In this document: positions 14,575 to 30,640 of the stretch, piece by piece
How the letters are laid out: each line of letters starts with the position of its first letter
Position numbering within the stretch: position 1 is the stretch's first letter
IMG/VR virus record: IMGVR_UViG_3300029993_000005
Span: 62,001-126,000 of that record
Reading direction: 5' to 3' (one strand)
Length of the DNA: 64,000 bases
Program-made: the position numbers and the translations under genes
Notes under the pieces: generated by a model
The model's database searches: none
Told to the model about the DNA's origin: nothing
The model's input: only the letters and a program-made list of their open reading frames with translations

Positions 14575-15198
14575 ATGATCTATCTTAAAAGCACTAGCTG
14601 CAAACGAAGAATGAAACAACGTCAAATAGAAATCAATGGTGTTGATGATTTGGATGATGAACTGACACTCATCTTGTCCTATGGGACAGCAGAACAGTTA
14701 CTTATTCAGATTAATAACGAGCTGGTCAACGAATCGATTCTAAACCCAATTTCGACACTTAATGAATATGTAATCAAGCAGTTAACAGAAAAACTGGCGG
14801 TAGCACAAGAAAAATTGAAAGTGACTGAACGTAAGCTAGCTGCTGTAGAAAACCAAGTAAGCCACGCGAATGAAACCGAACGGGATGCTACAGATTTGTA
14901 TTCCTCGACGTCCGCAGAGAAAGAAGAATCTGTAGCGAAACAGCAATTCAATTTGGCACCAAACACTAGAGTCTTAGGTTTCAGTATTAAGACGTTAGGC
15001 ACAGTCTTAACTGAGAATAAAGAAGCACCCTTCTTTACCGATGTTGACATAACATTTAAGAATTCCGCCGGTGAAGTGGTGACGCAGCAGACCCGATTCA
15101 TGGAAGTGCATCATGCAGAGCATGTAGAGCGTTGCATACAAGACGGTGTTCCTTATAATATACTTGTGTCTATGGTTAATCCGAGTACTACCAAATGA
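14575..15198 (+). CDS. coiled-coil hypothetical protein, paralog of 12762..13358
   Basis: AAGGAG RBS; shared C-terminal domain. Confidence 0.65.
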   Translation: MIYLKSTSCKRRMKQRQIEINGVDDLDDELTLILSYGTAEQLLIQINNELVNESILNPISTLNEYVIKQLTEKLAVAQEKLKVTERKLAAVENQVSHANETERDATDLYSSTSAEKEESVAKQQFNLAPNTRVLGFSIKTLGTVLTENKEAPFFTDVDITFKNSAGEVVTQQTRFMEVHHAEHVERCIQDGVPYNILVSMVNPSTTK

Positions 15199-15632
15199 TG
15201 ATAGACAAAACACGAATCAAGCTGCAGGAGCTGAATGAACAGTATTACGATGAATGGCTTGTACTGTTCAACGACTACAACGTGTTCGGCATCCCTGACA
15301 CCAATGTTGTATGGCGAAAACTGATGAACCCCAAGTCAACTTTAGCTGGGTTTATTGCGGTCTACGAAAATAAACTCGTTGGCTTTGTCCATTATCTTCA
15401 CCATGAATCAGCACATTCAACTGCCTTTGACTGTCATCTGTCCGATTTATACGTAAGCCCGGATTTTAGGAACTTGGGGTTAGGAAAACAATTAATTGAC
15501 CAAGTGCGATTGGTTGCTAAATTCTGGACTTGGAGACGTGTCTATTGGACGACCGGTCATAACAGTGACGCACGTAAGCTCTATGACAAATACGTCAAGT
15601 CAGATTGCGTGGGCTATCAAATAAAGGCTTAG
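15195..15632 (+). CDS. GNAT family acetyltransferase
   Basis: LSDLYVSPDFRNLGLGKQLI (acetyl-CoA motif A), VYWTTGHNSDARKLYDK. Confidence 0.85.
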   Translation: MMIDKTRIKLQELNEQYYDEWLVLFNDYNVFGIPDTNVVWRKLMNPKSTLAGFIAVYENKLVGFVHYLHHESAHSTAFDCHLSDLYVSPDFRNLGLGKQLIDQVRLVAKFWTWRRVYWTTGHNSDARKLYDKYVKSDCVGYQIKA

Positions 15633-15677: not shown

Positions 15678-16118
15678 ATGGGAAACAGAATGCGTGAAAT
15701 CAGGTATGTTGAATGGGCCGACTACGATGATTGGGCTTCTATGGTAAGAGACTACGATTCAGACATACCTGACCCGGATGTCGCATGGACGAGGTTCTTC
15801 ACTCTAGGTACGGACTTACGATGCTTCGTAGCCGTGGAAGACCAACAGCTTGTGGGTTTTGTTAATTTCTTCCCCCACCAGACGCCGTTCAATACGGGTC
15901 AAATCTGTTACTTAGCTAACCTATATGTTAAACCTGAATTCCGCCGCCGTGGTATTGCCCGAGCCTTAGTCAACGAGGTGATAGAGAAGGCCGTGGCTAT
16001 GAACTGGTTGCGTGTCTATTGGGTGACAGAAAACGAAAATCCTGCGCGAGCCTTGTATGATTCTTACGCCGAGTCAGATTATGTACGCTATCACATAAAC
16101 CTCAAGGGCTTTGTATGA
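15678..16118 (+). CDS. GNAT family acetyltransferase, tandem paralog
   Basis: LANLYVKPEFRRRGIARALV, VYWVTENENPARALYD. Confidence 0.85.
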   Translation: MGNRMREIRYVEWADYDDWASMVRDYDSDIPDPDVAWTRFFTLGTDLRCFVAVEDQQLVGFVNFFPHQTPFNTGQICYLANLYVKPEFRRRGIARALVNEVIEKAVAMNWLRVYWVTENENPARALYDSYAESDYVRYHINLKGFV

Positions 16119-16927
16119 AACCCATGTTTGCAGTTCAATTCACAGATCGTGACGACACCGAACTACACAAAACTGTCGACGCCCTAAAGTCCGCTAGGCT
16201 GGACTATGAGTTGTTCGGTTTAATTCACTACTCGGATGACGTTACCAACCTTGAATCCTTCCCAACTGATCGTCCGGTCATACCACTGGGCTCGACGAAG
16301 ATGCTTGAGCTATACCTAAATGGTAAGTTGCCGTCGAACTGGAAAGTGATTTATGATGTCAACGCTTTTGATCAACAGCGCTACGCTAATCATTACGAGG
16401 GTGAATTGTTGAACTACGATGCCAAATACGACGTATACTGTTATGCTCGTGATTGGTGTTATCTCAAGGATGTATTCGTAAAGCCTGTCAATGACTTAAA
16501 GGTATTCGGTGGTTTTATTCTGGAAGCTCACACCACCCTTGACCAAGCACTAGCAAAAACAAGTCATGCTGAAATCAACTCCTACGAAAAGCTACTGTTC
16601 GCTCCTACCATTAACATCTACCGTGAATTCCGACTATTTATTGTCGACGGTGAAATCGTTGATGCTAGTGAATACCGTAACAACGGGCAGATCAAGCATC
16701 GCAAGGTCAGCGAAGATACTGGGTTCAAGCTTCAAGACTATTTCCAGAGCATCAAAGACCCTAACGCACCGTCTATGTATGCATTAGATATTGGTGAAGT
16801 CGACGGACCAGAAGGTATCGTCTTCAAGGTGATTGAACTTAACTGCTTTCACTGTAGTGGTATGTATGCATGCGATCAATCATTGATCTATCAGGAAGTC
16901 GCACACTACATGGGGCACATGAAATGA
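16115..16927 (+). CDS. ATP-grasp fold protein (DUF4343/R2K-like)
   Basis: VFVKPVNDLKVFGG, EFRLFIVDGEIV, YALDIG, KVIELNCFHCSG. Confidence 0.7.
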   Translation: MKPMFAVQFTDRDDTELHKTVDALKSARLDYELFGLIHYSDDVTNLESFPTDRPVIPLGSTKMLELYLNGKLPSNWKVIYDVNAFDQQRYANHYEGELLNYDAKYDVYCYARDWCYLKDVFVKPVNDLKVFGGFILEAHTTLDQALAKTSHAEINSYEKLLFAPTINIYREFRLFIVDGEIVDASEYRNNGQIKHRKVSEDTGFKLQDYFQSIKDPNAPSMYALDIGEVDGPEGIVFKVIELNCFHCSGMYACDQSLIYQEVAHYMGHMK

Positions 16928-17436
16928 CGCATCTACGCGGAAGCCGACGAGCTACCCGCCTCGTTAAGCGTGCAAGACCACAAACTTCCCAGTCTCTACT
17001 ACTGAAGCCCACCCCTATGCAGAACACCTACATAATGACCGGCCTAACTCCTTATGACACGGCGATGCAACTACTGATCGCCGATCTGTGTCGATCATTG
17101 GAAAACTTAGTAGCCGACGTAAAGACCAGGGCTGCGTGTGCCGATCTCAACCAGGATCTAGAAGATTTGTGTGACAGGTACAAAGCAAGTGACCCTCACT
17201 TTGAGGTGCTCCAGCCAGGATCAGCCACATCGTTCAAACGTGAGGCCAATTACCCGTACCGTTTGATACTGCCCATCCAACTTATCTTGCGCATGAAGGG
17301 TAGAACACGTCTGACTTTCATCAATTGCTATTGTCGCCTCACCGGGGAAGACGATTACGGACGGTTGCCGATTCGCAATCTTGACAACCAACAGTCGGAT
17401 GCAGAAAATCAAGAGCTAAACAGGGAAGCCCCATGA
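16924..17436 (+). CDS. hypothetical protein
   Basis: start refined to ATG 16924 overlapping the upstream stop. Confidence 0.5.
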   Translation: MTHLRGSRRATRLVKRARPQTSQSLLLKPTPMQNTYIMTGLTPYDTAMQLLIADLCRSLENLVADVKTRAACADLNQDLEDLCDRYKASDPHFEVLQPGSATSFKREANYPYRLILPIQLILRMKGRTRLTFINCYCRLTGEDDYGRLPIRNLDNQQSDAENQELNREAP

Positions 17437-17582
17437 CCTCAACATTAACACCCGATTACAAGGTAGAGCCGACGTTCGCGTCTGGTGTCAACATAGTCCC
17501 GGTACTGTCTGGTAGCCCATTCGCGAAATACCCTCAGCTACGCACCATTTGGGCGTCATCCTTCAATCTTTATACGTCATGA
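17433..17582 (+). CDS. 49-aa peptide similar to N-terminus of 18624..19097
   Basis: IVPVLSGSPFAKYPQLRTIW vs IVPATGDPFALYPQLRTIW; both ends overlap-coupled; not in ORF track. Confidence 0.5.
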   Translation: MTSTLTPDYKVEPTFASGVNIVPVLSGSPFAKYPQLRTIWASSFNLYTS

Positions 17583-17976: not shown

Positions 17977-18426
17977 ATGTCAGACACACGACTTATTCGC
18001 GGCATCAGTCTAAATTATTCGGATATCGAAGCGACTATCAAGAGCGCGGCCTACCATCAGTTCCCCGGAACCACAATGATCGTGTGTGCCCTAACTTTAA
18101 CCTTCGGCGGTCATATCGTCATTGGTTACAGTCGTCCTATTGATGACAAGCTGTTCAATGAGACGCTGGGTAAGACTGCAGCCCGCGACCGTGCAGTAGC
18201 GCATATATGGGACATCGCAGCTGTACAGGTGCGCATCGCAATGGAAGCAGAGACTTGGCAAGGGCCACAAAACCAACGTTCGCGTACACGTCTTATCAAC
18301 AAGGCGTTGGGACTTGCGGCGAGTGACACGGAGCCAACGCCAAAAGTAGTAGCAGTAGCTTCGACAACTCCGGACGTCGAAGACGATCTGCACTTGCACC
18401 TGAGAACTGGTGGGCCATCGGAGTGA
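17977..18426 (+). CDS. N4 gp49/Sf6 gp66-like (Acb4-like) protein, paralog A
   Basis: YHQFPGTTMIVCALTL...GYSRPIDDKLFNETLGKTAARDRAVAHIW. Confidence 0.7.
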   Translation: MSDTRLIRGISLNYSDIEATIKSAAYHQFPGTTMIVCALTLTFGGHIVIGYSRPIDDKLFNETLGKTAARDRAVAHIWDIAAVQVRIAMEAETWQGPQNQRSRTRLINKALGLAASDTEPTPKVVAVASTTPDVEDDLHLHLRTGGPSE

Positions 18427-18611
18427 TTCCAGAAGCTATAGCCTTTCAGTTAGTCCCTGTATACGCGGTGATTATCATTGGAGCGATCTCATGGATCGTG
18501 GTGATTGGTAGCGATTTGTATTTTAAACGACTGGCCTATTCGTGGCGCACTGCGGCATTTGCGGTGACTGTTACGGCGGGTATTGCTTGTGCTATTATTG
18601 AGAGACATTAA
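18423..18611 (+). CDS. small membrane protein
   Basis: two hydrophobic segments. Confidence 0.55.
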   Translation: MIPEAIAFQLVPVYAVIIIGAISWIVVIGSDLYFKRLAYSWRTAAFAVTVTAGIACAIIERH

Positions 18612-18623
18612 CAAGGAAGCAAA

Positions 18624-19097
18624 ATGACAGTGCTAATTGTGCCAGCGACAGGTGACCCCTTTGCGCTGTACCCACAGCTTCGTACAATCTGGCCCACACC
18701 ATTTAAAGAAATGGCGGAAGAAGCGTCTAAGGACCATAGTCATACGGGACAGGTGTGGTTGATTCTGAAAGACAACGATGTGGTAGGTATTACGGGTGTG
18801 TTCGACGATGACGAATGGCCTGATGTCGTTTTATTGCGGTGGCATGGGGTCGTGCCTCAACTCAGGGGCCAAGGTATAGGTCGACTAGCACTGGACCTTC
18901 TGGTGGCTCATGTTTGTCCTAAATTCTATCCTGAGTACAAACGTTTGGTAGAATTCGTACCTCACAATGATTATGGAAAGACCAAGGTGTACCAGTTCTT
19001 CAAGCGCTGCAACTTCGTAGACTATGGACCATTGGTGGACTTAGGCTATGGTCCCAAACTGTGGCAACCTGTTTCCTTAGATATAGGAATTGCATGA
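18624..19097 (+). CDS. GNAT family acetyltransferase
   Basis: VVGITG, LRWHGVVPQLRGQGIGRLAL, FFKRCNF. Confidence 0.75.
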   Translation: MTVLIVPATGDPFALYPQLRTIWPTPFKEMAEEASKDHSHTGQVWLILKDNDVVGITGVFDDDEWPDVVLLRWHGVVPQLRGQGIGRLALDLLVAHVCPKFYPEYKRLVEFVPHNDYGKTKVYQFFKRCNFVDYGPLVDLGYGPKLWQPVSLDIGIA

Positions 19098-19591
19098 CTA
19101 GGGTCAGTACTAACGATATTGTCATGACCCCAGATTGGGTTGCTGCAGATGTTATGTCATACTTCCCAGTCAAGGGAAAATTACTTGAGCCTTGTCGCGG
19201 CGATGGTGCGTTTTACAATCTAATGCCTAGTGGTTCAGATTGGGCCGAAATACGCCAGGGGCGTGATTTCTTCGATTACAGGCATAGAGTGGATTGGATC
19301 GTCACCAATCCACCCTATTCAATTTTCAATTCATTTCTGGACCATGCACTCAATATAGCCACTAACATCGTATTTATTATACCGGTCCCAAAGCTTATGG
19401 CAAGCTATGTTAAGCTAGATAAAATTTATGCTTGGGGGTCAATAAGGGAAGTTAGATACTATGGTACAGGTCGGCAGCTGGGGTTTCCTTTCGGGTTTCC
19501 TGTGGGCGCATTCTGGCTGGTCAAGAGTAGAACGCGGGATACAATGAAGATATCATTCGCAGTCACACCAAATAAAAGGAAGCGCAAATGA
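19094..19591 (+). CDS. small N6-adenine DNA methyltransferase
   Basis: TPDWVA, LLEPCRGDGAF (SAM motif I), DWIVTNPPYS (motif IV); start refined to ATG 19094. Confidence 0.8.
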   Translation: MTRVSTNDIVMTPDWVAADVMSYFPVKGKLLEPCRGDGAFYNLMPSGSDWAEIRQGRDFFDYRHRVDWIVTNPPYSIFNSFLDHALNIATNIVFIIPVPKLMASYVKLDKIYAWGSIREVRYYGTGRQLGFPFGFPVGAFWLVKSRTRDTMKISFAVTPNKRKRK

Positions 19592-19797
19592 GACCGCTTG
19601 AAGAATGTCGTAAATATGAAGTGTTGCTACCAGATGGTACATGGCAACCTGTGCATTGGGAGCAGTTGGACAAAGGTGACACCATTCGCTGCAATCCACC
19701 GTTGTTGGGTGACATTTATCACAGCTATGAGCCTTTTCTAGTGAACCGATTACCGTACTTATCCGCTGAACCCTTACCTGCTGAGGTCAAGTTATGA
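19588..19797 (+). CDS. hypothetical protein, paralog of 25436..25675
   Basis: LEECRKYEVLLPDGTWQPVHWEQLDKGD vs LDQCSKFQILDKDRTWIDVQMVQLEPGD. Confidence 0.6.
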   Translation: MRPLEECRKYEVLLPDGTWQPVHWEQLDKGDTIRCNPPLLGDIYHSYEPFLVNRLPYLSAEPLPAEVKL

Positions 19798-20066
19798 ACC
19801 CGCTTGGCTGTACTGGTTGCTTCACCGCAGAATGCCCACTGTCCTTCTGCCACTGCGGTTGCCATCGTGAAGGTTCGAACATGATGCACTGCATGCCCTG
19901 TTGTAGTTTCGTGATGTGCCGTAAGTGCGGTGAGGCTAAGCCTAATGTGACAATGGACTTGGGTGACTTCAAGTCCACGCCCAAGATTGAAGCGGAGAAA
20001 GAGCGTGAACTGTACGCAGAACTACACAAACGTTTTGGTCCGTGTCCCAGTAAGACTGTGGACTAA
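19794..20066 (+). CDS. Cys-rich (Zn-binding) hypothetical protein
   Basis: multiple CxxC/CxC/H clusters. Confidence 0.6.
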   Translation: MNPLGCTGCFTAECPLSFCHCGCHREGSNMMHCMPCCSFVMCRKCGEAKPNVTMDLGDFKSTPKIEAEKERELYAELHKRFGPCPSKTVD

Positions 20067-20081
20067 TAAAGGGAGAACTAA

Positions 20082-20267
20082 ATGAAGATGTCGGACAAAA
20101 CCTATCACCTGACGGTCAACACTTGCATAATCATTGTCGTCTTACTAGCGGCGGCCGTATCCTTCGCGCCACACCCACACAAGAAATGGGTTGAGCACGT
20201 GGCCGTAATTTTGATGGCTGCCCTATGTTCGATCTGTGTTGGTCTACGACTGTGGGCTAAGAAATAA
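20082..20267 (+). CDS. small two-TM membrane protein
   Basis: GGGAG RBS, two hydrophobic helices. Confidence 0.55.
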   Translation: MKMSDKTYHLTVNTCIIIVVLLAAAVSFAPHPHKKWVEHVAVILMAALCSICVGLRLWAKK

Positions 20268-20295
20268 GGAAACCTATATAAAGGTGTGGAGTAAA

Positions 20296-20556
20296 ATGAT
20301 GAACGATGAACTACAGAAACTCGTAAATGAACACGACAAGGCGAAGATGGTTGCCCAGATTGCTAAGCTGGAAGTTGCTGTAGCCTTCGAGAAAATAAGA
20401 GCCGCGTGTATGCATGATAAAGAAGATCTAGAAATAAAGTCGGATTACTTCCCTGGCAGTTATTCGGATACGGCATATACTGACCGCTGGAACCAGTGTA
20501 AAGTCTGTGGTGCTAAGAGCGTAGTTGAACGAACCAGTCACGGCTACTATGGGTGA
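20296..20556 (+). CDS. hypothetical protein
   Basis: GGAG RBS before ATG 20296; C-terminal CKVC. Confidence 0.6.
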   Translation: MMNDELQKLVNEHDKAKMVAQIAKLEVAVAFEKIRAACMHDKEDLEIKSDYFPGSYSDTAYTDRWNQCKVCGAKSVVERTSHGYYG

Positions 20557-20787
20557 TTGCAAATGAAAATCAGAATGCACAGAGGTTGTCGTACCGAGTC
20601 CCTTGCAACCTTAGAGGACATACCATCAAATTTAGAGGCTGTGACTGATTATCTAGTGAGACACGACCTAGCCATCACTGATGAGGTGACAGTAGAACTC
20701 TACGTAACCATTGCAGGCGAGGATACGTATGTTGTTAGGGTTGGTGATGTTCCATGGGCATTTGCGGGCGGAGGCATACATAAATGA
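20557..20787 (+). CDS. hypothetical protein
   Basis: 76 aa, packed. Confidence 0.55.
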   Translation: MQMKIRMHRGCRTESLATLEDIPSNLEAVTDYLVRHDLAITDEVTVELYVTIAGEDTYVVRVGDVPWAFAGGGIHK

Positions 20788-21056
20788 ATGCACATCAGAG
20801 ACGTAAACTTAGGCGTCATCCAGTAGTGCGTAAGATAAAATACGTTCCTTCCGGTGTCTACGTGTGGGAATTTAATTTCTCTTCAGTGGTTCCTAACCAC
20901 AGCGGTGCAAAATATCTTCTTACCGGCTCTGTGGTGTTATGACCAAAAGATTTATTCTGGGAAAAAATTACACGGCTTGTAGCATGGGAGGCCGCGCAAC
21001 GACGCGAAAAGCGACTTGCCTCTCGCCGTAAGCAAAAGGAGCAATCGGATGCGTAA
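20784..21056 (+). pseudogene. ~90-codon gene interrupted by in-frame TGA at 20940-20942
   Basis: frame continues PKDLFWEKITRLVAWEAAQRREKRLASRRKQKEQSDA to TAA 21054-56, overlapping the next RBS/ATG. Confidence 0.5.
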
Positions 21057-21297
21057 CAGTATGAATAGCAGTCTAACCACCTCGGCGGTACCCATTTTCT
21101 TCTGTGTCGTATTTGTTCTTATTATCGCCTTTGGCGTATATGATCGGATACAACATCAAGCACTTTTACGCGCACATGGGTGCCTGTTATACACGGAAGC
21201 GCCCACCGGTCACTATCGTCTGGTAGGTAAAGTAATAACGCCTGAATACGTGTACGTCTACGAATGCACGGATGGCCTGCGCACAGAGATACGCTGA
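21049..21297 (+). CDS. membrane-anchored hypothetical protein
   Basis: AAGGAG RBS, ATG 21049, one TM segment. Confidence 0.6.
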   Translation: MRNSMNSSLTTSAVPIFFCVVFVLIIAFGVYDRIQHQALLRAHGCLLYTEAPTGHYRLVGKVITPEYVYVYECTDGLRTEIR

Positions 21298-21363
21298 AAG
21301 TTATTGAGTGATTGAATGAATGACAATGGATTCAAACTCAGCTAAGCGAAAGGAAAATAAGAA

Positions 21364-21690
21364 ATGTCAGATAGCACACCTGTTAGGCACGTGATTGTTT
21401 TGCGATACCTCTTCAAGACCCACGAGATTCGTGAATGGCGGAAACCGTACTACATATCACCCAAAGGCAGATGGTGCTTCCGCTGGGGCGCTGGTACATG
21501 GAACGGGTTGAATCCCGCCCGTATTGGTCAATTCGAATACTGGGGTGACTCCGCTGAGATGTATACGACACCCGACAGGTATCACGAGGATCGTGCCCAT
21601 TTCTATTCGTGCGTCGTCAAAGATCTCCACAGAAGGCACTTGGAGGTCGTGCGTAAATACGAAGTCAAATTCCAGCGCAAGGGTACTTGA
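21364..21690 (+). CDS. hypothetical protein
   Basis: gcgaaaggaaaataagaaATG RBS. Confidence 0.6.
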   Translation: MSDSTPVRHVIVLRYLFKTHEIREWRKPYYISPKGRWCFRWGAGTWNGLNPARIGQFEYWGDSAEMYTTPDRYHEDRAHFYSCVVKDLHRRHLEVVRKYEVKFQRKGT

Positions 21691-21717
21691 AATGGCTGTG
21701 GCTACACTGAATAGGGA

Positions 21718-23007
21718 TTGATAATGCATTTCATATTACACGTATATCAACAAATAACTGAATTAGCAAAGACAAACCAGTTGGTGGCAGGGGCTATTTC
21801 ATTGTGGGGTTTATCGGTACTTACGTACACGGCACGTAACATACCGTCTCAAGTACGGAATTTTGTTCTCGGTCAAGTTACCACCAGCTTAGTATTCAAC
21901 AACACTGGGTTCTATGGTAATCGGTACGTGTTCTTGGCTTTCTGCGAATGGTACAAAATAAACAAGGGAGCACACCTATCCAGAACACTATCTTTGGATG
22001 CCACGGATGCCCATGGTGGTGTTGTTATGGGGCCTGGTTATGGCTCACATATATTCTGGGCAGAAGGTCGTCTATTTTGGTTTGCTAAATCCAAGCTTGA
22101 GAGTAAAGCGGATATGGGCATCCAAGAAATAATAACCCTTACCACCTTTGGTCGCTCAAGAAAACCATTCGAAGTTTTAGTAGATAGGTTCAAACCTCGC
22201 GAGGATGCCGACTGTACTAAAATATTTGGGATAACAAATGATGGCAAGTGGGATTTAACAGCTGAAGTACCTAAACGATCCTGGTCATCCGTTGTCTTGT
22301 CACCGGCAACAAAGGATCAAATCACAACACAGCTAGATCAATTCTATGCAATGCGGTCTTGGTATATCGATAACGGGTTGGCACATAAGCTGTGTACGTT
22401 GGTGCATGGTAAGCCTGGGTGTGGAAAGACATCTATGATTAAGGCCTTGGCCGCCAAGTACGGGGCTAATATCTACTCGTTGAGTTTGAACTCAGTAACT
22501 GACAGATCGCTCCCAATATTTCTATCCAATGTCCCTACAGGATCATTTGTACTGATAGAAGACTTCGATTCGTATTCGGCAGTAAAGTCTCGAACGGAAC
22601 CTAAGCCGGATAGCAATAAAGTTACGGACCTGTTCGCAGACGCCGGAGGTTTGACGCTATCTGGGGTACTTAATTCATTGGACGGTGTAGTATCATTGGA
22701 TAATGTGGTGATTTTTATGACCACAAATCATATTGAAAAGATAGACCAAGCAATGCTACGCAAAGGCAGGACTGACTTGATAATGGAGTTAGGCTATATG
22801 GAAACACCGGAGATTCAAGAGTATGTGCACTCAGCTTACGGCAAAGCTATTAATGAGCAGTTCATTCCGGTAGCTGGATGCGAGCTGCAAGGGTTGTTAC
22901 TAGAACACAAGCAGAATTTTGAAACTTTCCACATAGCACTTACAACCAAGTTCGGAGCCAGTAGCACCACGGGTTCCAACATTAGTACCCTGGTAAATAG
23001 GAATTGA
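21718..23007 (+). CDS. BCS1-like AAA+ ATPase
   Basis: N-terminal TM, GPGYGSHIFW (BCS1_N-like), HGKPGCGKTS, LIEDFD, TLSGVLNSLDG, MTTNH, MLRKGRTD. Confidence 0.85.
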   Translation: MIMHFILHVYQQITELAKTNQLVAGAISLWGLSVLTYTARNIPSQVRNFVLGQVTTSLVFNNTGFYGNRYVFLAFCEWYKINKGAHLSRTLSLDATDAHGGVVMGPGYGSHIFWAEGRLFWFAKSKLESKADMGIQEIITLTTFGRSRKPFEVLVDRFKPREDADCTKIFGITNDGKWDLTAEVPKRSWSSVVLSPATKDQITTQLDQFYAMRSWYIDNGLAHKLCTLVHGKPGCGKTSMIKALAAKYGANIYSLSLNSVTDRSLPIFLSNVPTGSFVLIEDFDSYSAVKSRTEPKPDSNKVTDLFADAGGLTLSGVLNSLDGVVSLDNVVIFMTTNHIEKIDQAMLRKGRTDLIMELGYMETPEIQEYVHSAYGKAINEQFIPVAGCELQGLLLEHKQNFETFHIALTTKFGASSTTGSNISTLVNRN

Positions 23008-24038
23008 TAATGCGTGAATTTATTCTCAACCCTGATATAGAACCCCGCCCCTATACTATGTGCGGGGCCGAAAAGCTTGGACATAAACTGGCGTATATAC
23101 TAAAAGAAGCAGCTAAGTCAAAAGACTACACCTTGTTGAGCGCCAACTATGAGCAGCCACGTGATATGAACATGCCTCAGCGTATGACCCTAGGCTTCTT
23201 CGACAATTTGGCTGTTGCTTATTCCGCACACAGGTCTATAGAACTCGACCCAAAGGACCTGTGGTTTATTGTCCTATGCGAATTGGCCGACTACATCAAA
23301 AATAATCATGAACAGCTACGTTCATTGTTCACTAAAGAAAAAGGTAAGGTGACGATCCTTGTGCCGACAGCTGATCATGCACAAATTGATCTGTTAGCAG
23401 TGCTGCGCCAGCTACGTGATTTGGTGCCCTTGGATGTAGATTTGTTTGTACCCAAGCTTAGTACGCAGACTGAAGCCTGCGAACTGGCTATGGTCGCTGC
23501 TCTGTGTGATGGACTTCAACGTTATTATGACTACATGACATTTATGTGTGGCATAAAAGCCATCCGCTTACTGGGGACTCCTGAAGACTGGCTAACACTG
23601 GCACGCACCGCAGTTCAGCTGATGGCCTTGTTTATACCCATTGTTGGAACTACTGATAAAGTAATCTCATATCTGAAGAGCATTCATCAGACGTTCATCA
23701 AACTAAGCAAGTGCTACGATGAAGAGCTGATGTCCAAAGCTGAGACACTAGACTTCCTTGGACAAATATTCTCGACAACTCGCGTAGGTAGCGGCGGACA
23801 GCTCGATATCGATGGCTGGATAAGCAGCCTCTATTTCCCACGCAAGACCAAGCGTTTCGAAAATTTCCAGAATTCACTGGCTATCGTCCCTTACTCGAAT
23901 CTTGAGTCTGGACGTCAGTTCAAGACTATTCATGGTGCTTTTTCGAACTACGATGCAGACGATTTTATCGCCACGGGTTACGGACATTTTGTTTTTGAGG
24001 AAGTAGAAACTCCACCTGAACAGAAAGCAGGAGCCTAA
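23004..24038 (+). CDS. DUF4419-like protein
   Basis: GFFDNLAVAYSAHRSIELDPKDLWFIVL...LRSLF...GKVTILV, CGIKAIRLLGTPEDW, IDGWI. Confidence 0.65.
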   Translation: MIMREFILNPDIEPRPYTMCGAEKLGHKLAYILKEAAKSKDYTLLSANYEQPRDMNMPQRMTLGFFDNLAVAYSAHRSIELDPKDLWFIVLCELADYIKNNHEQLRSLFTKEKGKVTILVPTADHAQIDLLAVLRQLRDLVPLDVDLFVPKLSTQTEACELAMVAALCDGLQRYYDYMTFMCGIKAIRLLGTPEDWLTLARTAVQLMALFIPIVGTTDKVISYLKSIHQTFIKLSKCYDEELMSKAETLDFLGQIFSTTRVGSGGQLDIDGWISSLYFPRKTKRFENFQNSLAIVPYSNLESGRQFKTIHGAFSNYDADDFIATGYGHFVFEEVETPPEQKAGA

Positions 24039-24039
24039 T

Positions 24040-24372
24040 ATGGCAAAAAGATTTGAGGGCTATTCAGAGTTCCAGGCTCGCGTGTTGGACCTAGGTACTG
24101 CCAACCTTATAATGCAAGGCAAATCAGGAAGGCTGATCAGTTTCAATATTGCTGATACGCATCAAACGGCGTTCCCTCGTCATCTGTACGAGAACTGTCA
24201 GGCCATATTCGTGGTCGAACCATTTAAGGGCGAGTTCAAGTCGCCTTTGCCTGAAGGCTCAGCTTTGTACGGTGAGTATTTAGGAGCTGGTCCATTTGTG
24301 TCATGTATCAACTATATATCTGAACCTGTAACTGGGTTCAAGGTGGAGAACAGGGACCTAAAATGCGAATAG
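24040..24372 (+). CDS. hypothetical protein
   Basis: GGAG RBS. Confidence 0.6.
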   Translation: MAKRFEGYSEFQARVLDLGTANLIMQGKSGRLISFNIADTHQTAFPRHLYENCQAIFVVEPFKGEFKSPLPEGSALYGEYLGAGPFVSCINYISEPVTGFKVENRDLKCE

Positions 24373-24845
24373 TTAACTTGGACCAGTTCTTAGGGCTACC
24401 AAACGACACTGTGTTTTGCAAATATCGCCACTGTAGCTTTGGTGCCATACAGATCAAGACCTCTAATCAGGGTGGTGAATCCAAAGACTTCTACACGCAA
24501 GATCTTCTGGAGGTCAAGTGCAGTGGTAGTGGTGAATTATTCAATATTTTGTTAGACGCTGCGAACCACGACCTTTCGTTTGAGTTGGACCTTGACTGCG
24601 TGGGCCGGGATGGCTTCTACGAAAAGGATCAGCTATACGCGGTCTTCGAGCCGGCCGATGTCCAGGCTATAATCAAGCGCCTGCTCGACACGTTACCGTC
24701 GCTCCGGGAACAACCACAGTCCAGCATCCCTCCTGTGGCTCCAACTCTCGTAGACGAAAGAATGGCTGCGATGCAGCAAGAACTGTACGAGGCTATTGAC
24801 CGTGATTTCTTAAAGCGGGCGATTGCAGAACAATCTACCAAGTGA
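24363..24845 (+). CDS. hypothetical phage protein
   Basis: 160 aa, overlap-coupled. Confidence 0.65.
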   Translation: MRIVNLDQFLGLPNDTVFCKYRHCSFGAIQIKTSNQGGESKDFYTQDLLEVKCSGSGELFNILLDAANHDLSFELDLDCVGRDGFYEKDQLYAVFEPADVQAIIKRLLDTLPSLREQPQSSIPPVAPTLVDERMAAMQQELYEAIDRDFLKRAIAEQSTK

Positions 24846-24852
24846 TAAGATA

Positions 24853-25449
24853 ATGAAAACTTATTACGAAACCGGGGAATTCTTTCATCCCGAAAGCGTT
24901 GATGGTGGCGAAGACAACCTGGAGATCATTTGTTGTCAGGAGTTGATGCCGTTCCAAACTGAAAGCGGGATCCGTAATGACTTCATGCATTCTGAATACG
25001 TAGGGGTGTTGATCTCACCAGGGGATTCGTACAAGCTCCCGAGTGTAGAACTGTACTGCATGGCCCTGCACCGCAGCACCCCACGGTCTGCATCTAGATT
25101 TTATGTATGTCGGTCAGCAGCAAAGATGGTCAAGGCTGTTTATCCATTGCCTGACCTGGACTCAGTGATGACGGCCTTGGGCTACATGAAGATCTTGGGC
25201 TGCACGAAGATCGACAAGCCAAAGTCAAAGGCCTGTGCATGCGTAAGTCCTGCTGATAAACAGCAAGGTCCATGCGAGTATCAGTGGATGGTGTGGCCCG
25301 AGGGAAGCACAGAATGGGTACACACCTTTAGCAAGGACTTCGCCCGTCACGTTGCGTACACTGCTGGAGGCTCGAACGTTATTGAGTACATGCGTGTTAG
25401 GCCTGAAAACGTAACCTACAACGAGGGCTTCGCACATGAAATCTCTTGA
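24853..25449 (+). CDS. hypothetical protein
   Basis: start refined to ATG 24853. Confidence 0.55.
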   Translation: MKTYYETGEFFHPESVDGGEDNLEIICCQELMPFQTESGIRNDFMHSEYVGVLISPGDSYKLPSVELYCMALHRSTPRSASRFYVCRSAAKMVKAVYPLPDLDSVMTALGYMKILGCTKIDKPKSKACACVSPADKQQGPCEYQWMVWPEGSTEWVHTFSKDFARHVAYTAGGSNVIEYMRVRPENVTYNEGFAHEIS

Positions 25450-25675
25450 TCAGTGTTCAAAATTTCAAATTCTAGATAAGGACCGCACGTGGATTGATGT
25501 TCAAATGGTACAGTTGGAACCTGGGGATGTATATCGTAGACTCCATCCAACATCTGGACTGCCAGACCCTCAATTCGGGTTACCAGAGAAAAGAATTGTT
25601 AAGAAGGGTCCTTATATAGAAGTTCAGATACTCTTCGAAAATAATCCAACCGACGTTACGGAAACACCTGAATGA
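25436..25675 (+). CDS. hypothetical protein, paralog of 19588..19797
   Basis: shared L..C.K(F/Y).IL....W..V...QL..GD motif. Confidence 0.6.
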   Translation: MKSLDQCSKFQILDKDRTWIDVQMVQLEPGDVYRRLHPTSGLPDPQFGLPEKRIVKKGPYIEVQILFENNPTDVTETPE

Positions 25676-25953
25676 AGACTTTACAAGAAGTATTCGCTGA
25701 AAGCTTCCAACGCGATGACCTAGCCGGGGCCAAGGCCTGGGCCTTACGTTGGAATCGTGAATGGGATCAAGTCGTGCCTGATCACGACGATCCGAATGAT
25801 CCTAGTGATTGCTACAGCCAGCGGGCAATGGCTGGTCACATCTCGGACTACCTGGAAGGTTTCACTGGTACAGAACCTGCGTCATACAGTGCGAGCAACA
25901 AGAACTATATGGTGACAAAGTACGGTTCGGAAATCTATTGGGCAATGGGATAG
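25672..25953 (+). CDS. hypothetical protein
   Basis: 93 aa, overlap-coupled. Confidence 0.6.
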   Translation: MKTLQEVFAESFQRDDLAGAKAWALRWNREWDQVVPDHDDPNDPSDCYSQRAMAGHISDYLEGFTGTEPASYSASNKNYMVTKYGSEIYWAMG

Positions 25954-25965
25954 CTTGCGTGCGGT

Positions 25966-25973
25966 AGTAAATA
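25966..25973 (+). promoter_or_regulatory. AGTAAATA box
   Basis: intergenic, upstream of paralog array. Confidence 0.55.
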
Positions 25974-26001
25974 AGGTAAACACAACCCCAGAGGTTCACT
26001 T

Positions 26002-26346
26002 ATGACCGAGCAGGAAATTCAATGCGAGATTGACAAAATCGAACCGCAGTATGTTGCGGAAAGTCGCGAGGCAGAGACCCTATCGTTGTTCCGTGGTTCG
26101 CTCGCGGCGCTTCGTACCAAAGTAGAGTCTTTGATAGATTCTTACGATGAAGAAACTCTTATTATGTTCACAGCTGACGGCGAGACTTATGTGTTGAGCA
26201 GCACCGACGCTAGAGCTCACGCTATAAAGCAAATTGAAGACAGAGAAGCTAGAGCGCAGAGAAGAGAACAGAGAAAAGTAAAATACGATCGGGAGCTGTT
26301 CGAAGAACTGAAAGCACGCTTCGAACCGGAGGTTAAAAATGACTGA
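26002..26346 (+). CDS. paralog array member 1
   Basis: LFRGSLAALRTKVESLIDSY...ELFEELKARF. Confidence 0.65.
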   Translation: MTEQEIQCEIDKIEPQYVAESREAETLSLFRGSLAALRTKVESLIDSYDEETLIMFTADGETYVLSSTDARAHAIKQIEDREARAQRREQRKVKYDRELFEELKARFEPEVKND

Positions 26347-26671
26347 CAACATCGATATTTCCAAAACTAGTGCGTCCTCCGTCAAAGGAAAGGTTAAGTT
26401 GACAGGCTTTAGTTATTTCGACGGCTGGGTGTCCGAGCTACAGGACATGGTTAATGGTATTGCTGAGACTTACGGGGCTGACGCCCGCATAGAGTTAACG
26501 GATTACGAAGGCCTTGAAGTATGGGTGGTGACCGCCGCCAAGGCCCGTGAACACGTAAAGAATGAGGGGCTGCGATGCGCAGCCCGTATGAAGGCCCTAT
26601 CCGAAACTCAGGAGCAGAAAGAGCGTGAAATATATGCCGTGCTCCATGCCAAATACGGGGCATCGAAATGA
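26339..26671 (+). CDS. paralog array member 2
   Basis: YFDGWVSELQDMVNGIAETYGADARIEL...LHAKYG. Confidence 0.7.
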   Translation: MTDNIDISKTSASSVKGKVKLTGFSYFDGWVSELQDMVNGIAETYGADARIELTDYEGLEVWVVTAAKAREHVKNEGLRCAARMKALSETQEQKEREIYAVLHAKYGASK

Positions 26672-27006
26672 CCAAACGAAAAGAAAACGAATTGTTAGAT
26701 GTTCATGACATGAGTGCTAGTCTGGTCGTACCTAATAACCGCGTCTACGAACTAGAATATTTTGAGGGCTATCTGTTCGAATTGCAGGAACGCGTAACTA
26801 AGCTGATAACTACGTATGGACCACACGCGCGTATAGAGTTTTCGGCAGACAACGATTCAGCTAATGTTTATATCGCGACGCAGGAACAGATTAAAGTCCA
26901 ACTAGCTAGGGACCAGGAGCGGCACAAACAGCAGGCCAAGCTCACAAAAGAACATGAGCTTCTGCTGCTAAAGAATCTGCAAGCCAAATATGGAACTCCG
27001 AAATGA
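26668..27006 (+). CDS. paralog array member 3
   Basis: YFEGYLFELQERVTKLITTYGPHARIEF...LQAKYG. Confidence 0.7.
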   Translation: MTKRKENELLDVHDMSASLVVPNNRVYELEYFEGYLFELQERVTKLITTYGPHARIEFSADNDSANVYIATQEQIKVQLARDQERHKQQAKLTKEHELLLLKNLQAKYGTPK

Positions 27007-27326
27007 AGTACATCACAATCTTGATCATGGCCTTGTCCTTGTACGGTTGCGATGAACACTACCAAGGGACGGTGAAGGGCAAGCAGTATACGCCTGCAAC
27101 TTATGGGACTGGTATCACGTCAAATGGAAAATTAGTCTCTACATCAACAGACGCCCAATATTCGGTGGAACTCGATGGTGGGGCCTCCGACTTTGAAGTA
27201 GACCACCTATATTACAAAAAGCTAAAGCTAGGCGACGTCATCGACTACCATCGACATTTCTGGACCAGTGAAATGATGATATCCCGAGGTGGTTCGGTCG
27301 TCTTCGATAATGAGAAAACACCATGA
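27003..27326 (+). CDS. predicted lipoprotein
   Basis: signal peptide with lipobox-like LYGC. Confidence 0.6.
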   Translation: MKYITILIMALSLYGCDEHYQGTVKGKQYTPATYGTGITSNGKLVSTSTDAQYSVELDGGASDFEVDHLYYKKLKLGDVIDYHRHFWTSEMMISRGGSVVFDNEKTP

Positions 27327-27511
27327 TCAGTGTCACCGGGCTAGGCCCAGACCACAACCTAATGCTTGAAATCCACAAGGACTCTAAGTCAGAATCCTTC
27401 TTTATCTGGACCAGTGACTATTTCAAGGACTCGAACTTCAGCATCGAAGATTTGACGCGTATACGTGATGCACTTACGCGATTCATTGACTTGGAGACCC
27501 AATTCAAATGA
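27323..27511 (+). CDS. hypothetical protein
   Basis: 62 aa, overlap-coupled. Confidence 0.5.
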   Translation: MISVTGLGPDHNLMLEIHKDSKSESFFIWTSDYFKDSNFSIEDLTRIRDALTRFIDLETQFK

Positions 27512-27963
27512 GCCTCGACTGTTCGCACTGCAAGTTGCCTATCAATCAGGGCGACAATGCAATAATGATGGAAGGTGGTATCGTCCACCAACATTGTAAA
27601 CAAGCTCATGTGGCACGGCTAGAATCCACAATTGACATAAGCAACGTCAGCGCTTCTCTTGTGGACGGGAACGTCGTAATATACGAACTCAATTTATTCG
27701 ATGGTAGCCTGTCTGATTTTCAGACCTTGGTGTCCTCTGTTGTAGAAAAGTATGGGATCGACGCTCGTATCGATTTGACCAACGACTGTGGTTATTTAGA
27801 AGTTTGCGTGGCGACGGCCGAGCAGTGCAGGACGCATGTAAAACATAGGGCAGAGGTCGACAAGCAGCGGGCATTTAATAATGAGGCTGCTCGGCAGCTG
27901 GACGGGGAGAAGTACAAAGCCTTGTTCGATGCAAACTACGCCAAGTACAAGGGACTCGAATGA
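27508..27963 (+). CDS. paralog array member 4 with N-terminal CxxC...HxxC finger
   Basis: LFDGSLSDFQTLVSSVVEKYGIDARIDL...YAKYKG. Confidence 0.7.
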   Translation: MSLDCSHCKLPINQGDNAIMMEGGIVHQHCKQAHVARLESTIDISNVSASLVDGNVVIYELNLFDGSLSDFQTLVSSVVEKYGIDARIDLTNDCGYLEVCVATAEQCRTHVKHRAEVDKQRAFNNEAARQLDGEKYKALFDANYAKYKGLE

Positions 27964-28100
27964 TGCTCAAGGCCTTCCTATTAGCTTTATTGCTCTTAGC
28001 AGTGTTCTTTGGCGTCTTCTACTACGAACACCTTCTGTGGGTCGAATGCCGGGCCACCCCGCATACGTGGTGGTACTGCTATCGCACGCTTAGCCGCTAA
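27963..28100 (+). CDS. 45-aa membrane peptide
   Basis: MLKAFLLALLLLAVFFGVFYY...; fills the gap, not in ORF track. Confidence 0.5.
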   Translation: MLKAFLLALLLLAVFFGVFYYEHLLWVECRATPHTWWYCYRTLSR

Positions 28101-28108
28101 GGACTATC

Positions 28109-28360
28109 ATGAGAGATTATTTCTTTGAGACGGGTCAGCCGCTAACTGACGCCGATTCTTTTGGTAGGGCAAAGAATCTTCTAGTGGCCGCCAACCTACC
28201 TGATGCTGAAATTGATTCAATACGGTTATACCACGTAACTGAGCCGCATGAATACGCATGGGTCGAGATCACGTACTGGCGAGGCGGTGGCTTAACCATA
28301 ATGTCTCGTCCCTTTGAGATGTTTGACAACAGTAGTCCAATCTATTTAAAGGCAAAATAA
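28109..28360 (+). CDS. hypothetical protein
   Basis: AAGGA RBS. Confidence 0.6.
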   Translation: MRDYFFETGQPLTDADSFGRAKNLLVAANLPDAEIDSIRLYHVTEPHEYAWVEITYWRGGGLTIMSRPFEMFDNSSPIYLKAK

Positions 28361-29203
28361 ATGTCGAACTTAAGAATTACCCCCGAGCATATCGATGCAA
28401 TGATTGTGAATCAGCAGTACCATCAGTTTCCTGGGACCACGCTGATCGCCTGCGCCCTGACCCTCACTGTAGGCCATCACATGGTTGTTGGCTATAGCCG
28501 CCCTGTCGACGAATCCAACTTCAAGTACAAGCTTGGACAGGCTGCTGCACTAAAGAACGCACGAGACCAGATCTGGGAAGTAGCGGGCACCGCCCTTCGC
28601 CTTGCATTGGCGCGAACAGATGGCTATCGTGATCCAGGCCCGTTCTTTGTGGTCAACGCGCTTGACCTAAGCTACAGCCAGGACGGCAGTCTGGTGCCAA
28701 CTCCAAAAGCAGCAGTAACTTCGACAGGGCCGGCCGTCGAAGACGAGCACACGCTTGCACCTGAGAACCGTGAGCCATCTAAAAAGACGAAAGGTGACTT
28801 AATAGCGCTTCTTCGGGAGCGGAACGCGGAAGCTCTTAAAAAGATTGAAGCCCTGGAGCAGTTGTGTGCGGCTGCTTATCAGATGGCGGGCATAGTCAAT
28901 GCACCTGTGCGGTTTCTCGACGCACTGAGTGATGCTGCTAACGGTGAACTCGGTGCTCGTGTTCTGACTGATAACCTCCTGCCAATCAACGCCAATGAAA
29001 GCGGATCCTTCTACGCCGATATGCCACCGGCTAAGAACAGACGTGTGTACCATATCACAGCAGGCGCTGCCGACTGGAATCCGACGACGGCTCAGCTCAA
29101 GGCTCTTGAGGACCAGTTTAAAGATGCAAAATTTGACGACAACGGAAATGCGTTTGTAGCCACTCGCGTCGAGGCCAACGTTTCGGTACTGGATCTGTTC
29201 TGA
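28361..29203 (+). CDS. N4 gp49/Sf6 gp66-like (Acb4-like) protein, paralog B, with extra C-terminal domains
   Basis: ITPEHIDAMIVNQQYHQFPGTTLIACALTL...SNFKYKLGQAAALKNARDQIW. Confidence 0.75.
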   Translation: MSNLRITPEHIDAMIVNQQYHQFPGTTLIACALTLTVGHHMVVGYSRPVDESNFKYKLGQAAALKNARDQIWEVAGTALRLALARTDGYRDPGPFFVVNALDLSYSQDGSLVPTPKAAVTSTGPAVEDEHTLAPENREPSKKTKGDLIALLRERNAEALKKIEALEQLCAAAYQMAGIVNAPVRFLDALSDAANGELGARVLTDNLLPINANESGSFYADMPPAKNRRVYHITAGAADWNPTTAQLKALEDQFKDAKFDDNGNAFVATRVEANVSVLDLF

Positions 29204-30597: not shown

Positions 30598-30605
30598 AGT
30601 AAATA
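30598..30605 (+). promoter_or_regulatory. AGTAAATA box
   Basis: intergenic, upstream of glycosyltransferase pair. Confidence 0.55.
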
Positions 30606-30640
30606 AAGGGTGGGACCGTGATAGGTCCCACCCTTTTCTT
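30605..30640 (+). terminator. intrinsic terminator
   Basis: 13-bp perfect stem aaagggtgggacc/ggtcccacccttt followed by T-run. Confidence 0.8.

What the first reader, a model, noticed from the sequence alone, without database searches (positions are those of the whole stretch)
17977..29203. Two divergent gp49/Acb4-like paralogs (17977..18426 and 28361..29203), candidate nucleotide-signal sponges
Seen: both carry HQFPGTTxIxCALTLTxGxHxVxGYSRPxD...F...LG..AA...A...IW and share a TPK..V.ST.P.VED linker, so they are duplicates. Established: this pattern matches the N4 gp49/Sf6 gp66 family. From memory (verify), that family includes the Acb4 anti-CBASS sponge. Both copies replace the usual GESAC/IWxLEGY residues with GYSRP and IW(D/E)(I/V)A. 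Inference: altered ligand specificity; the long copy adds further domains.
Basis: partly seen in the sequence, partly recalled or inferred. Interest (0 to 1): 0.62.

Follow-up and report, generated by a model that had tools for sequence, protein, structure and literature searches.

The report
Two divergent Acb4-like sponge genes
A 230-kb phiRSL1-like jumbo phage carries two diverged copies of the Acb4 anti-CBASS "sponge" domain with changed pocket residues, and the longer copy is fused to two undescribed modules, one of which copies a piece of the phage's own portal protein.

Summary
Both ORFs exist at the stated coordinates (149 and 280 aa). They match each other (42% identity over 137 aa, E 2e-29) and both pass Pfam's cut-off for PF13876. 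That family is the published Acb4 anti-CBASS sponge family.

A family profile built here hits only PDB 9E4W (SPO1 Acb4). The folded N-domain of the long copy has 9E4W as its top 13 structure matches. A homotetramer model passes its controls.

The "GYSRP" and "IW[DE][IV]A" variants are real. They are absent from the 1,331 published family sequences and, in every collection scanned, occur only in this phage. They lie at or next to positions that contact the ligand or form the tetramer joint in SPO1 Acb4. Those positions also vary among homologs known to bind cGAMP, so altered specificity is plausible but unproven.

The long copy's extension holds two conserved, unannotated modules:
- M1 is a helical module found in about 170 proteins of many architectures.
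- M2 is homologous to an internal segment of this phage's own portal protein.

No other protein found combines either module with an Acb4 domain.

Verdict: new, divergent members of a known family with a new fusion architecture. Interest is moderate.

The parts
17977..18426 (+). Short copy (P0001, 149 aa): Acb4-like domain followed by a tail that is probably disordered and ends just after the shared linker motif.
   Evidence: ORF; PF13876 45.1 bits; Shine-Dalgarno AAGGAA upstream.
18019..18246 (+). Acb4-like (PF13876) domain of the short copy, aa ~15-90, with GYSRP at aa 50-54 and IWDIA at aa 77-81.
   Evidence: Pfam match aa 15-83; aligned in A3; contact table. This copy was not folded.
18334..18384 (+). 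Shared linker motif of the short copy (PTPKVVAVASTTPDVED, aa 120-136).
   Evidence: BLASTP alignment of the pair.
28361..29203 (+). Long copy (P0002, 280 aa): Acb4-like domain, linker, module M1, module M2.
   Evidence: ORF; PF13876 57.1 bits; the identical sequence occurs in three independent assemblies.
28376..28618 (+). Acb4-like domain of the long copy (aa 6-86): helix 8-14, strands 15-22, 29-35 and 41-46, helix 56-86. GYSRP is at aa 44-48 and IWEVA at aa 71-75.
   Evidence: AF2 model pLDDT 87.9; top 13 Foldseek PDB matches are 9E4W chains, TM 0.62-0.74; homotetramer model passes its controls.
28697..28744 (+). Shared linker motif of the long copy (PTPKAAVTSTGPAVED, aa 113-128), within a region that is probably disordered (aa ~90-143).
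   Evidence: (pLDDT falls after aa 90).
28817..29023 (+). Module M1 (aa ~153-221): helical hairpin with the motif CAAAYQ[LM]AG..APVRFLDALSDAANGE..LLP[VI]. It is a widespread module with no annotation.
   Evidence: Exhaustive search: 180 hits, most over this stretch, 45-65% identity, in proteins of 60-800 aa; model helices 144-178 and 183-193; no Pfam, NCBIfam or PDB match.
29033..29191 (+). Module M2 (aa ~225-277): small strand-helix-strand unit homologous to an internal segment of portal proteins, including this phage's own portal.
   Evidence: phrog_16240 'portal protein' E 4.4e-5; BLASTP to own portal aa 300-343, 36% identity, E 4e-8; matches the portals of four relatives; weak structural alignments to the same region of four solved portals, Z 2.4-4.4; motif alignment.

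Best explanation
Both genes encode members of the Acb4 (PF13876) family of phage sponge proteins. The most likely mechanism has four steps. Early in infection, the N-terminal domain of each protein assembles into a pinwheel-like homotetramer. Pockets at the protomer interfaces bind cyclic (di)nucleotide alarm signals made by host CBASS-type defence. The bound signal can no longer activate the effector, so the phage escapes abortive infection. The two copies arose by duplication within this lineage and share a remodelled pocket and joint region, so they form a distinct subfamily whose ligand range may differ from that of ordinary members. The long copy carries two extra modules on a flexible linker, so one tetramer would display four copies of each. 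Shown here: family membership, the fold of the long copy's domain, a predicted tetramer, the location of the changed residues, the modular architecture and its uniqueness. Inferred: ligand binding, which ligand, anti-defence activity, and any role of M1 and M2.
For: - Family: PF13876 is passed by both copies. A profile of the two copies plus 49 relatives hits only 9E4W, 'anti-CBASS 4 (Acb4)', at E 5.1e-9 in a gapless alignment.
- Fold: the AF2 model of the long copy's domain (pLDDT 87.9) has 9E4W chains as ranks 1-13 (TM 0.62-0.74). dsRBD and ribosome-hibernation folds follow, the same neighbourhood the Acb4 paper reports.
- Tetramer: the model scores 0.72, best of 3 controls 0.11. That mark was reached by 20 of 30 proteins solved as pairs of one chain and by 1 of 23 solved as single chains. 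These counts hold only roughly, because my own alignment and four copies were used. The runs agree in at least 79% of contacts and the partner's pLDDT is at least 76.
- Interfaces: they are a beta-sheet face (aa 19-47) and helix 73-84 against hairpin 37-40 and loop 49-50. These correspond to the beta-sandwich and 'joint' interfaces described for SPO1 Acb4.
- Published function: all eight purified homologs bound 3'3'-cGAMP. N4 Acb4 binds c-di-AMP at 111 nM, and N4 and Bas69 Acb4 act in vivo.
- Context: the genes lie in an accessory-gene region with an orphan DNA methyltransferase, a GNAT, an ATP-grasp protein and many small unknown genes.
Against: - Of the ten SPO1 ligand-contact positions, only F62 is identical in both copies. 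N63 is kept in the short copy only, and I66 is conservatively L in both.
- The lysine that contacts phosphate from the third protomer (K81) is E or D here. The residue that stacks on guanine (F48; F or Y in ordinary members) is H.
- Of 40 near-invariant family columns, the long copy keeps 27 and the short copy 20.
- The short copy sits on a branch about 4.6 times longer than the long copy's and was not folded.
- The tetramer pass may reflect the model's memory of 9E4W.
- No binding or infection data exist for this subfamily, and its only known source is one uncultured phage.
Confidence: 0.65

Rival explanations
1. The Acb4 fold and tetramer are kept, but the remodelled pocket binds a signal that ordinary Acb4 proteins do not, or has lost c-di-AMP binding. 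One possible driver is escape from guard systems such as PanDA, which fire when Acb4 sequesters c-di-AMP. The two copies may split the ligand range between them.
For: Both copies share changes at pocket and joint positions: F/Y to H, A/C/S to P, A to V/I, I to A, A/Q/S to E/D, plus a new Arg and Asp in the beta3-alpha4 loop. These residues lie at the inter-dimer interface of the tetramer model. Ligand range already differs among family members, since 3'3'-cAA is bound only by homologs from phages of Gram-negative hosts. PanDA puts direct selection on c-di-AMP binding. The two copies also differ from each other at N63-equivalent (K versus N) and at an otherwise invariant Asn (N53 versus L59).
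Against: Contact residues vary widely across the family while cGAMP binding is retained in all eight tested homologs, so residue changes predict ligand poorly. No ligand modelling or assay was done here.
Confidence: 0.3
2. Only one copy is a working sponge. The short copy is a decaying or repurposed duplicate that lost the C-terminal modules and is drifting.
For: The short copy's branch is 3.33 against 0.73 for the long copy. It keeps only 20 of 40 near-invariant columns and has lost the invariant Asn before the conserved Phe. It ends just after the linker motif that, in the long copy, leads into M1 and M2.
Against: The reading frame is intact, has a good ribosome-binding site and is identical in independent assemblies. 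The hydrophobic core, the invariant Cys, Gly, Phe and Trp, and the subfamily-specific residues are all kept. No trace of M1 or M2 lies downstream of it.
Confidence: 0.15
3. In the long copy the Acb4-like domain serves mainly as a tetramerisation scaffold, and the working parts are M1 and/or M2. They might bind a host or phage partner, for example a protein that normally binds that part of the portal.
For: M1 is attached to many unrelated N-terminal domains, which is typical of a portable interaction module. M2 is conserved as a separate small gene in related jumbo phages and keeps the portal segment's motif.
Against: The Acb4-like domain is well conserved and shares its special residues with the short copy, which has no M1 or M2. 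Nothing is known about the function of M1 or M2.
Confidence: 0.1

Closest known systems
Acb4 (anti-CBASS 4), Bacillus phage SPO1 gp1.3, PDB 9E4W; Pfam PF13876 (Phage_gp49_66)
   Same: Same Pfam family. It is the only PDB hit of the family profile. The fold matches: short N-terminal helix, three antiparallel strands, long C-terminal helix. The predicted homotetramer has equivalent beta-face and joint interfaces.
   Different: About 21% identity in the core. Nine of ten ligand-contact residues differ in the long copy and eight of ten in the short copy, including K81 to E/D and F48 to H. There is a one-residue insertion in the beta2-beta3 hairpin. The N-terminal helical region is shorter. The proteins are 149 and 280 aa rather than 96 aa.
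Ordinary Acb4 homologs of phages of Gram-negative hosts (N4 gp49, Sf6 gp66, Pseudomonas phage KPP23 ORF061; ~100 aa, 'GESA[AC]...IWxLEGY')
   Same: 40-52% identity over the core. The invariant Cys, Gly, Phe, Gly and Trp are shared, and the PGTT and NF motifs are shared by the long copy.
   Different: Both window copies change 11 of the 40 near-invariant columns in the same way: E to Y, A to R, S to D, and LEGY to VAGT or IAAV. They lack the first N-terminal helix (IExEIQxKGLxAPR). They carry a shared linker, and the long copy carries M1 and M2. None of 79 fetched relatives has these features.
Acb4 fusion proteins (Acb4-Tad2 of Pasteurella phage Pm86; Acb4-PF21825 'Sequestin' of Pseudomonas phage YH6)
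   Same: An Acb4 domain joined by a linker to further small modules that more often occur without it. In the published cases the partners are themselves sponges.
   Different: The partners here are neither Tad2 (PF11195) nor Sequestin (PF21825): neither family is found anywhere in the genome at E up to 10. M1 and M2 have no known function, and this is the only fusion of either one with Acb4 found.
phiRSL1 ORF with PF13876 (234 aa) in the closest cultured relative of this phage
   Same: A long-form Acb4-like protein in a phiRSL1-like jumbo phage.
   Different: It is the ordinary GESA/IWELEGY type, only 33% identical, and its C-terminal extension is unrelated. It is a single copy.

Membership tests
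Acb4 / PF13876 (Phage_gp49_66) | Sequence match to the Pfam model above its gathering score | tested here: met
   45.1 bits (short copy) and 57.1 bits (long copy) against a cut-off of 27. A six-frame scan of the genome gives the same two places.
Acb4 / PF13876 (Phage_gp49_66) | Fold of the solved member: N-terminal helix or helices, three antiparallel strands, long C-terminal helix (dsRBD-like) | tested here: met
   Long copy aa 1-100: pLDDT 87.9 with elements H8-14, E15-22, E29-35, E41-46 and H56-86. 9E4W chains take ranks 1-13, TM 0.62-0.74, with rmsd 1.5-2.4 A over 69-74 columns for most chains.
Acb4 / PF13876 (Phage_gp49_66) | Homotetramer built from a beta-sandwich dimer and a helix 'joint' interface | tested here: met
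   Prediction only. Score 0.72, best of 3 controls 0.11. The mark was reached by 20 of 30 proteins solved as pairs of one chain and by 1 of 23 solved as single chains; these counts hold only roughly, because my own alignment and four copies were used. The runs agree in at least 79% of contacts and the partner's pLDDT is at least 76. The interfaces are aa 19-47, and aa 73-84 with 37-40. Because 9E4W is solved, the pass may come from memory and shows likeness, not binding.
Acb4 / PF13876 (Phage_gp49_66) | Conservation of the SPO1 ligand-contact residues (K36, F48, E49, V56, Y57, F62, N63, I66, T70, K81) | tested here: not met
   Only F62 is kept in both copies. N63 is kept in the short copy, and I66 becomes L in both. 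This does not define the family: ordinary members also differ from SPO1 at most of these positions, and all eight purified homologs bound cGAMP.
Acb4 / PF13876 (Phage_gp49_66) | Binds cyclic dinucleotide signals and blocks CBASS | not testable with these tools
   Needs purified protein and phage challenge assays.
Known Acb4 fusion partners: Tad2 (PF11195) and Sequestin (PF21825) | HMM match of the extension to either family | tested here: not met
   No match in the whole genome at E up to 10. Pfam scans of the long copy and of 83 module sequences give nothing.
Phage portal protein (phrog_16240) | Full-length portal architecture | tested here: not met
   Only aa ~225-273 of the long copy match profile positions 289-337 of 643. 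The phage's real portal is a separate gene (L089:661-2193, E 2.5e-129). M2 is a portal-derived segment, not a portal.

The most novel reading that the evidence does not exclude
The modules fused to the Acb4 domain are themselves counter-defence parts, following the 'guilt by fusion' logic that uncovered Sequestin. M1 would be a new, widespread module that binds a signal or a host target. M2 would be a mimic of an internal portal segment, which by position I take to be the stem/clip region (from memory, not verified here). Such a mimic could decoy a defence that senses the portal, or dock the sponge onto partners that bind that part of the portal. One tetramer would then combine up to three evasion activities.
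Probability: 0.12. Interest if true: 0.8.

Novelty: new variant of a known kind. Interest (0 to 1): 0.5.

Why it matters
Acb4 is a recently described and very widespread phage sponge family. Its ligand specificity is now known to be under two-sided selection: the phage must bind defence signals, yet binding c-di-AMP triggers guard systems such as PanDA.

A phage that keeps two diverged copies with a jointly remodelled pocket is a natural experiment on how specificity evolves. It is also a ready pair of proteins for ligand-panel and structural work.

Separately, the long copy points to two conserved, completely unannotated phage modules:
- M1 occurs in about 170 protein clusters.
- M2 is a portal-derived segment that related jumbo phages keep as its own small gene.

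Fusion partners of Acb4 have already led to one new sponge family, so these modules are reasonable candidates for functional testing.

Tried and rejected
- Single-sequence phmmer of either protein against the PDB found no Acb4. A 51-sequence profile solved this.
- The word-index search with the short copy found only the protein itself.
- Alignment A1 was too divergent for a locus scan. The tighter A2 worked, but it returns only relatives carrying the YH[QV]FP or NAR..IW patterns, so that set is biased towards ordinary members.
- The ESM Atlas search of the C-terminal part gave no score above 0.83 and a poor model, so it was not used.
- The faint DUF6835 and PDB 2NR5 lead for M1 was not confirmed by scanning 83 module sequences or by a profile search of the PDB.
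- NCBIfam gave nothing for any of the proteins.
- Structure searches for M1 gave only generic helical hairpins at Z about 5, below what is informative for helices.
- The first tree run was lost. The quick tree has few columns and long branches, so 78% support for sisterhood is modest. I rely as well on the shared hairpin insertion, 11 shared column changes and the shared linker.
- The contact labels printed were shifted by one residue because one SPO1 residue had been trimmed. One search is the corrected table. The L89 row is unreliable because of a nearby gap.
- Complex prediction was busy twice before it ran.
- Promoter-like and terminator-like sites in 16-31 kb are no more frequent than in shuffles.
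Full report
**What is there.**
- The window is part of a 230,110-bp virus record estimated to be 97% complete.
- Its portal is 69% identical to that of Ralstonia phage phiRSL1 and 64-66% identical to those of Burkholderia phages BcepSauron, BcepSaruman and BCSR5. It is therefore a phiRSL1-like jumbo phage, and its host is probably among the Burkholderiales.
- Each has a plausible start. The genes are tightly packed with their neighbours.
- The same sequences occur with 100% identity in two further assemblies, so they are not assembly artefacts.

**The pair.**
- The two proteins align at 42% identity over 137 residues, E 2e-29. The alignment runs through the domain and into a shared linker motif, PTPK..V.ST.P.VED, with a one-residue gap in the short copy.
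- In the core domain they are 51% identical. For the short copy that is closer than to any of 49 ordinary relatives (best 47%); for the long copy it equals its best ordinary relative (52%).
- In a quick maximum-likelihood tree they are sisters with modest support (SH-aLRT 78%). The homolog of Erwinia jumbo phage PhiEaH1 is the next neighbour (82%). The short copy's branch is about 4.6 times longer than the long copy's. Long branches and few columns make the tree weak by itself.
- Three further shared features support one duplication in this lineage: a one-residue insertion in the beta2-beta3 hairpin, identical changes at 11 columns that are near-invariant elsewhere, and the linker.
- The genome holds no third copy.

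**Family.**
- Both proteins pass the Pfam gathering score for PF13876. They also match PHROGs 322 and 3934, both of unknown function.
Chang et al. (10.1101/2024.12.30.630793) state that SPO1 Acb4 (gp1.3, 96 aa, PDB 9E4W) belongs to PF13876. Acb4 is a tetramer that sequesters four 3'3'-cGAMP molecules, and all eight other purified homologs bound 3'3'-cGAMP.
- A profile of the two window domains plus 49 relatives from viral contigs finds one PDB entry only: 9E4W, at E 5.1e-9.
- The AlphaFold2 model of the long copy's residues 1-100 (pLDDT 87.9) has 9E4W chains as its 13 best PDB matches, TM 0.62-0.74. dsRBD-like and ribosome-hibernation folds follow, the same neighbourhood the paper reports for Acb4.

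**Quaternary structure.**
- Four copies of the long copy's N-domain score 0.72, with the best of 3 controls at 0.11.
- That mark was reached by 20 of 30 proteins solved as pairs of one chain and by 1 of 23 solved as single chains. These counts hold only roughly here, because my own alignment and four copies were used.
- The runs agree in at least 79% of contacts, and the partner's pLDDT is at least 76.
- The contacts are a beta-sheet face (aa 19-47) and helix 73-84 packing on hairpin 37-40 and loop 49-50. These correspond to the beta-sandwich and 'joint' interfaces described for SPO1 Acb4.
- Because 9E4W is solved, this pass shows likeness and may come from memory. It does not show that this protein assembles.

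**The changed residues.**
- 'GESAC' occurs 504 times and 'GYSRP' never in the 1,331 family sequences of Chang et al..
- A degenerate DNA pattern for V[VI]GYSRP[VI]D[DE]xxF finds only this phage in IMG/VR and in JGI metagenomes. It finds nothing in 185,579 reference genomes.
- The SPO1 ligand-contact residues map as follows:

| SPO1 residue | Long copy | Short copy | Ordinary members |
|---|---|---|---|
| K36 | T27 | T33 | T |
| F48 | H40 | H46 | F/Y |
| E49 | M41 | I47 | I/T/N/Q |
| V56 | P48 | P54 | A/C/S |
| Y57 | V49 | I55 | A |
| F62 | F54 | F60 | F |
| N63 | K55 | N61 | D |
| I66 | L58 | L64 | I/L |
| T70 | A62 | A68 | I |
| K81 | E73 | D79 | A/Q/S |

- The Pro of GYSRP and the residue after it therefore sit at two SPO1 contact positions. 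The acidic residue after IW sits at the position of the lysine that contacts phosphate from the third protomer. The lost LEGY lies in the helix that forms the joint.
- In the tetramer model, residues 37-40, 49-50 and 73-84 are at the inter-dimer interface.
- Ordinary members also differ from SPO1 at most contact positions, and every purified homolog bound cGAMP. Specificity therefore cannot be read from these residues.
- Parts of the pattern occur elsewhere. Acidovorax phage ACP17 has 'VWDFAAF' and Erwinia phage PhiEaH1 has 'DDARP'.

**Why two copies might matter (inference).**
- Ligand range differs within the family: only homologs from phages of Gram-negative hosts bind 3'3'-cAA.
- N4 Acb4 binds c-di-AMP at 111 nM, and the PanDA defence system fires when that happens.
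- This gives a selective reason both to retune the pocket and to keep two versions.

**The extension of the long copy.**
- An exhaustive HMMER search with residues 96-280 found 180 proteins. They fall into two separate modules.
- M1 (aa ~153-221):
  - It carries a strikingly conserved motif, CAAAYQ[LM]AG..APVRFLDALSDAANGE..LLP[VI], usually preceded by a long helix.
  - It occurs in proteins of 60-800 aa with unrelated N-termini. Examples are a zinc-ribbon protein of phiRSL1 and long chromosomal proteins of Burkholderia glumae.
- M2 (aa ~225-277):
  - It occurs as small stand-alone proteins. Two of them are 154-aa proteins annotated 'portal protein' in BcepSaruman and BcepSauron.
  - It matches an internal stretch of the portal family phrog_16240.
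  - It aligns to residues 300-343 of this phage's own portal at 36% identity, pairwise E 4e-8, and to the portals of all four cultured relatives.
  - It shares the motif R..HxTxG...W.PT..EL...F..A.[FY]D..G...[AS]TR with them.
- The AlphaFold2 model of residues 130-280 (pLDDT 82.6) shows a helical hairpin for M1 and a strand-helix-strand unit for M2.
- M2 aligns weakly (Z 2.4-4.4) but consistently to the same region of four solved portals: 9RKQ 235-288, 8QEM 286-341, 8QSY 241-288 and 8PHU.
- From my memory of portal domain boundaries this is the stem/clip region. I did not verify that here.
- Neither module has a Pfam, NCBIfam or PDB sequence match. Neither is Tad2 or Sequestin, the known Acb4 fusion partners.
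- Five proteins carry M1 and M2 together. None of the 150 listed hits carries an Acb4-like domain, so this fusion is unique among what was found.
- phiRSL1 has one ordinary-type Acb4-like protein with an unrelated extension, and Motura has one short homolog. BcepSauron and BCSR5 have none.

**Verdict.**
- The most likely function is sequestration of nucleotide defence signals by tetramers. I put this at about 0.65.
- The main uncertainty is whether this remodelled subfamily still binds a defence signal, and which one.
- The altered-specificity idea is reasonable but untested.
- Nothing here required a referred step.

Noticed in passing
L089:661-2193 (G000:C1:126093-127625, just beyond the window's end): The phage's portal gene matches the portal family only over aa 41-387. 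Its aa 426-497 match inteins (Mxe GyrA intein 4OZ6, E 4e-6), and the frame ends at 511 aa with a further ORF in another frame downstream. In phiRSL1 and BcepSauron the portal is one uninterrupted gene of 635-651 aa. The portal here appears to carry an intein or other insertion.
   Followed up: partly
window 62523-64000 and on (L090:124-1731): A 536-aa ORF whose C-terminal third matches HNH/homing endonuclease PHROGs (phrog_3339, phrog_559) lies just upstream of the interrupted portal gene.
   Followed up: partly
window 26002-27963: A tandem family of four paralogous small genes (26002-26346, 26339-26671, 26668-27006, 27508-27963; up to 50% identity) of unknown function lies just upstream of the long copy.
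   Followed up: partly
window 17433-17582 and 18624-19097: A 49-aa ORF upstream of the short copy repeats the N-terminus of the GNAT acetyltransferase gene downstream of it (65% identity over 26 aa). The short copy is thus flanked by a partial duplicate of its neighbour.
   Followed up: partly
window 19588-19797 / 25436-25675; 15195-15632 / 15678-16118; 12762-13358 / 14575-15198: There are three further paralog pairs in the same region (32%, 40% and 22% identity). The 12-30 kb stretch is unusually rich in duplicated accessory genes.
   Followed up: no
window 21718-24038: A BCS1-like AAA ATPase (BCS1_N plus AAA; phrog_7485 E 1.5e-117) overlaps by 4 nt with a DUF4419 protein (E 1e-31). This conserved-looking gene pair has no known role in phages.
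   Followed up: no
window 16115-16927 and 19061-19591: An R2K-clade ATP-grasp protein and an orphan DNA methyltransferase (NPPY motif; phrog_799 E 2e-28) lie close to the short copy. This fits an accessory or counter-defence region.
   Followed up: no
W01 (BcepSauron) 118595-118864; W04 (Motura) 15155-15250; W03 (BCSR5) 46009-46164: Related jumbo phages keep module M2, the portal-segment copy, as separate genes. In BcepSauron the copy lies about 30 kb from the real portal, and there M2 is repeated twice within one ORF.
   Followed up: partly
window 30605-30636: A strong bidirectional terminator-like hairpin (13-bp stem, 8 G-C pairs, T runs on both strands) closes the gene block that contains the long copy.
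   Followed up: no
window 54500-54820 / 55028-55177: Two short + strand ORFs share a 33-residue stretch at 73% identity, inside or beside the 53626-55164 gene. This may be an internal repeat.
   Followed up: no
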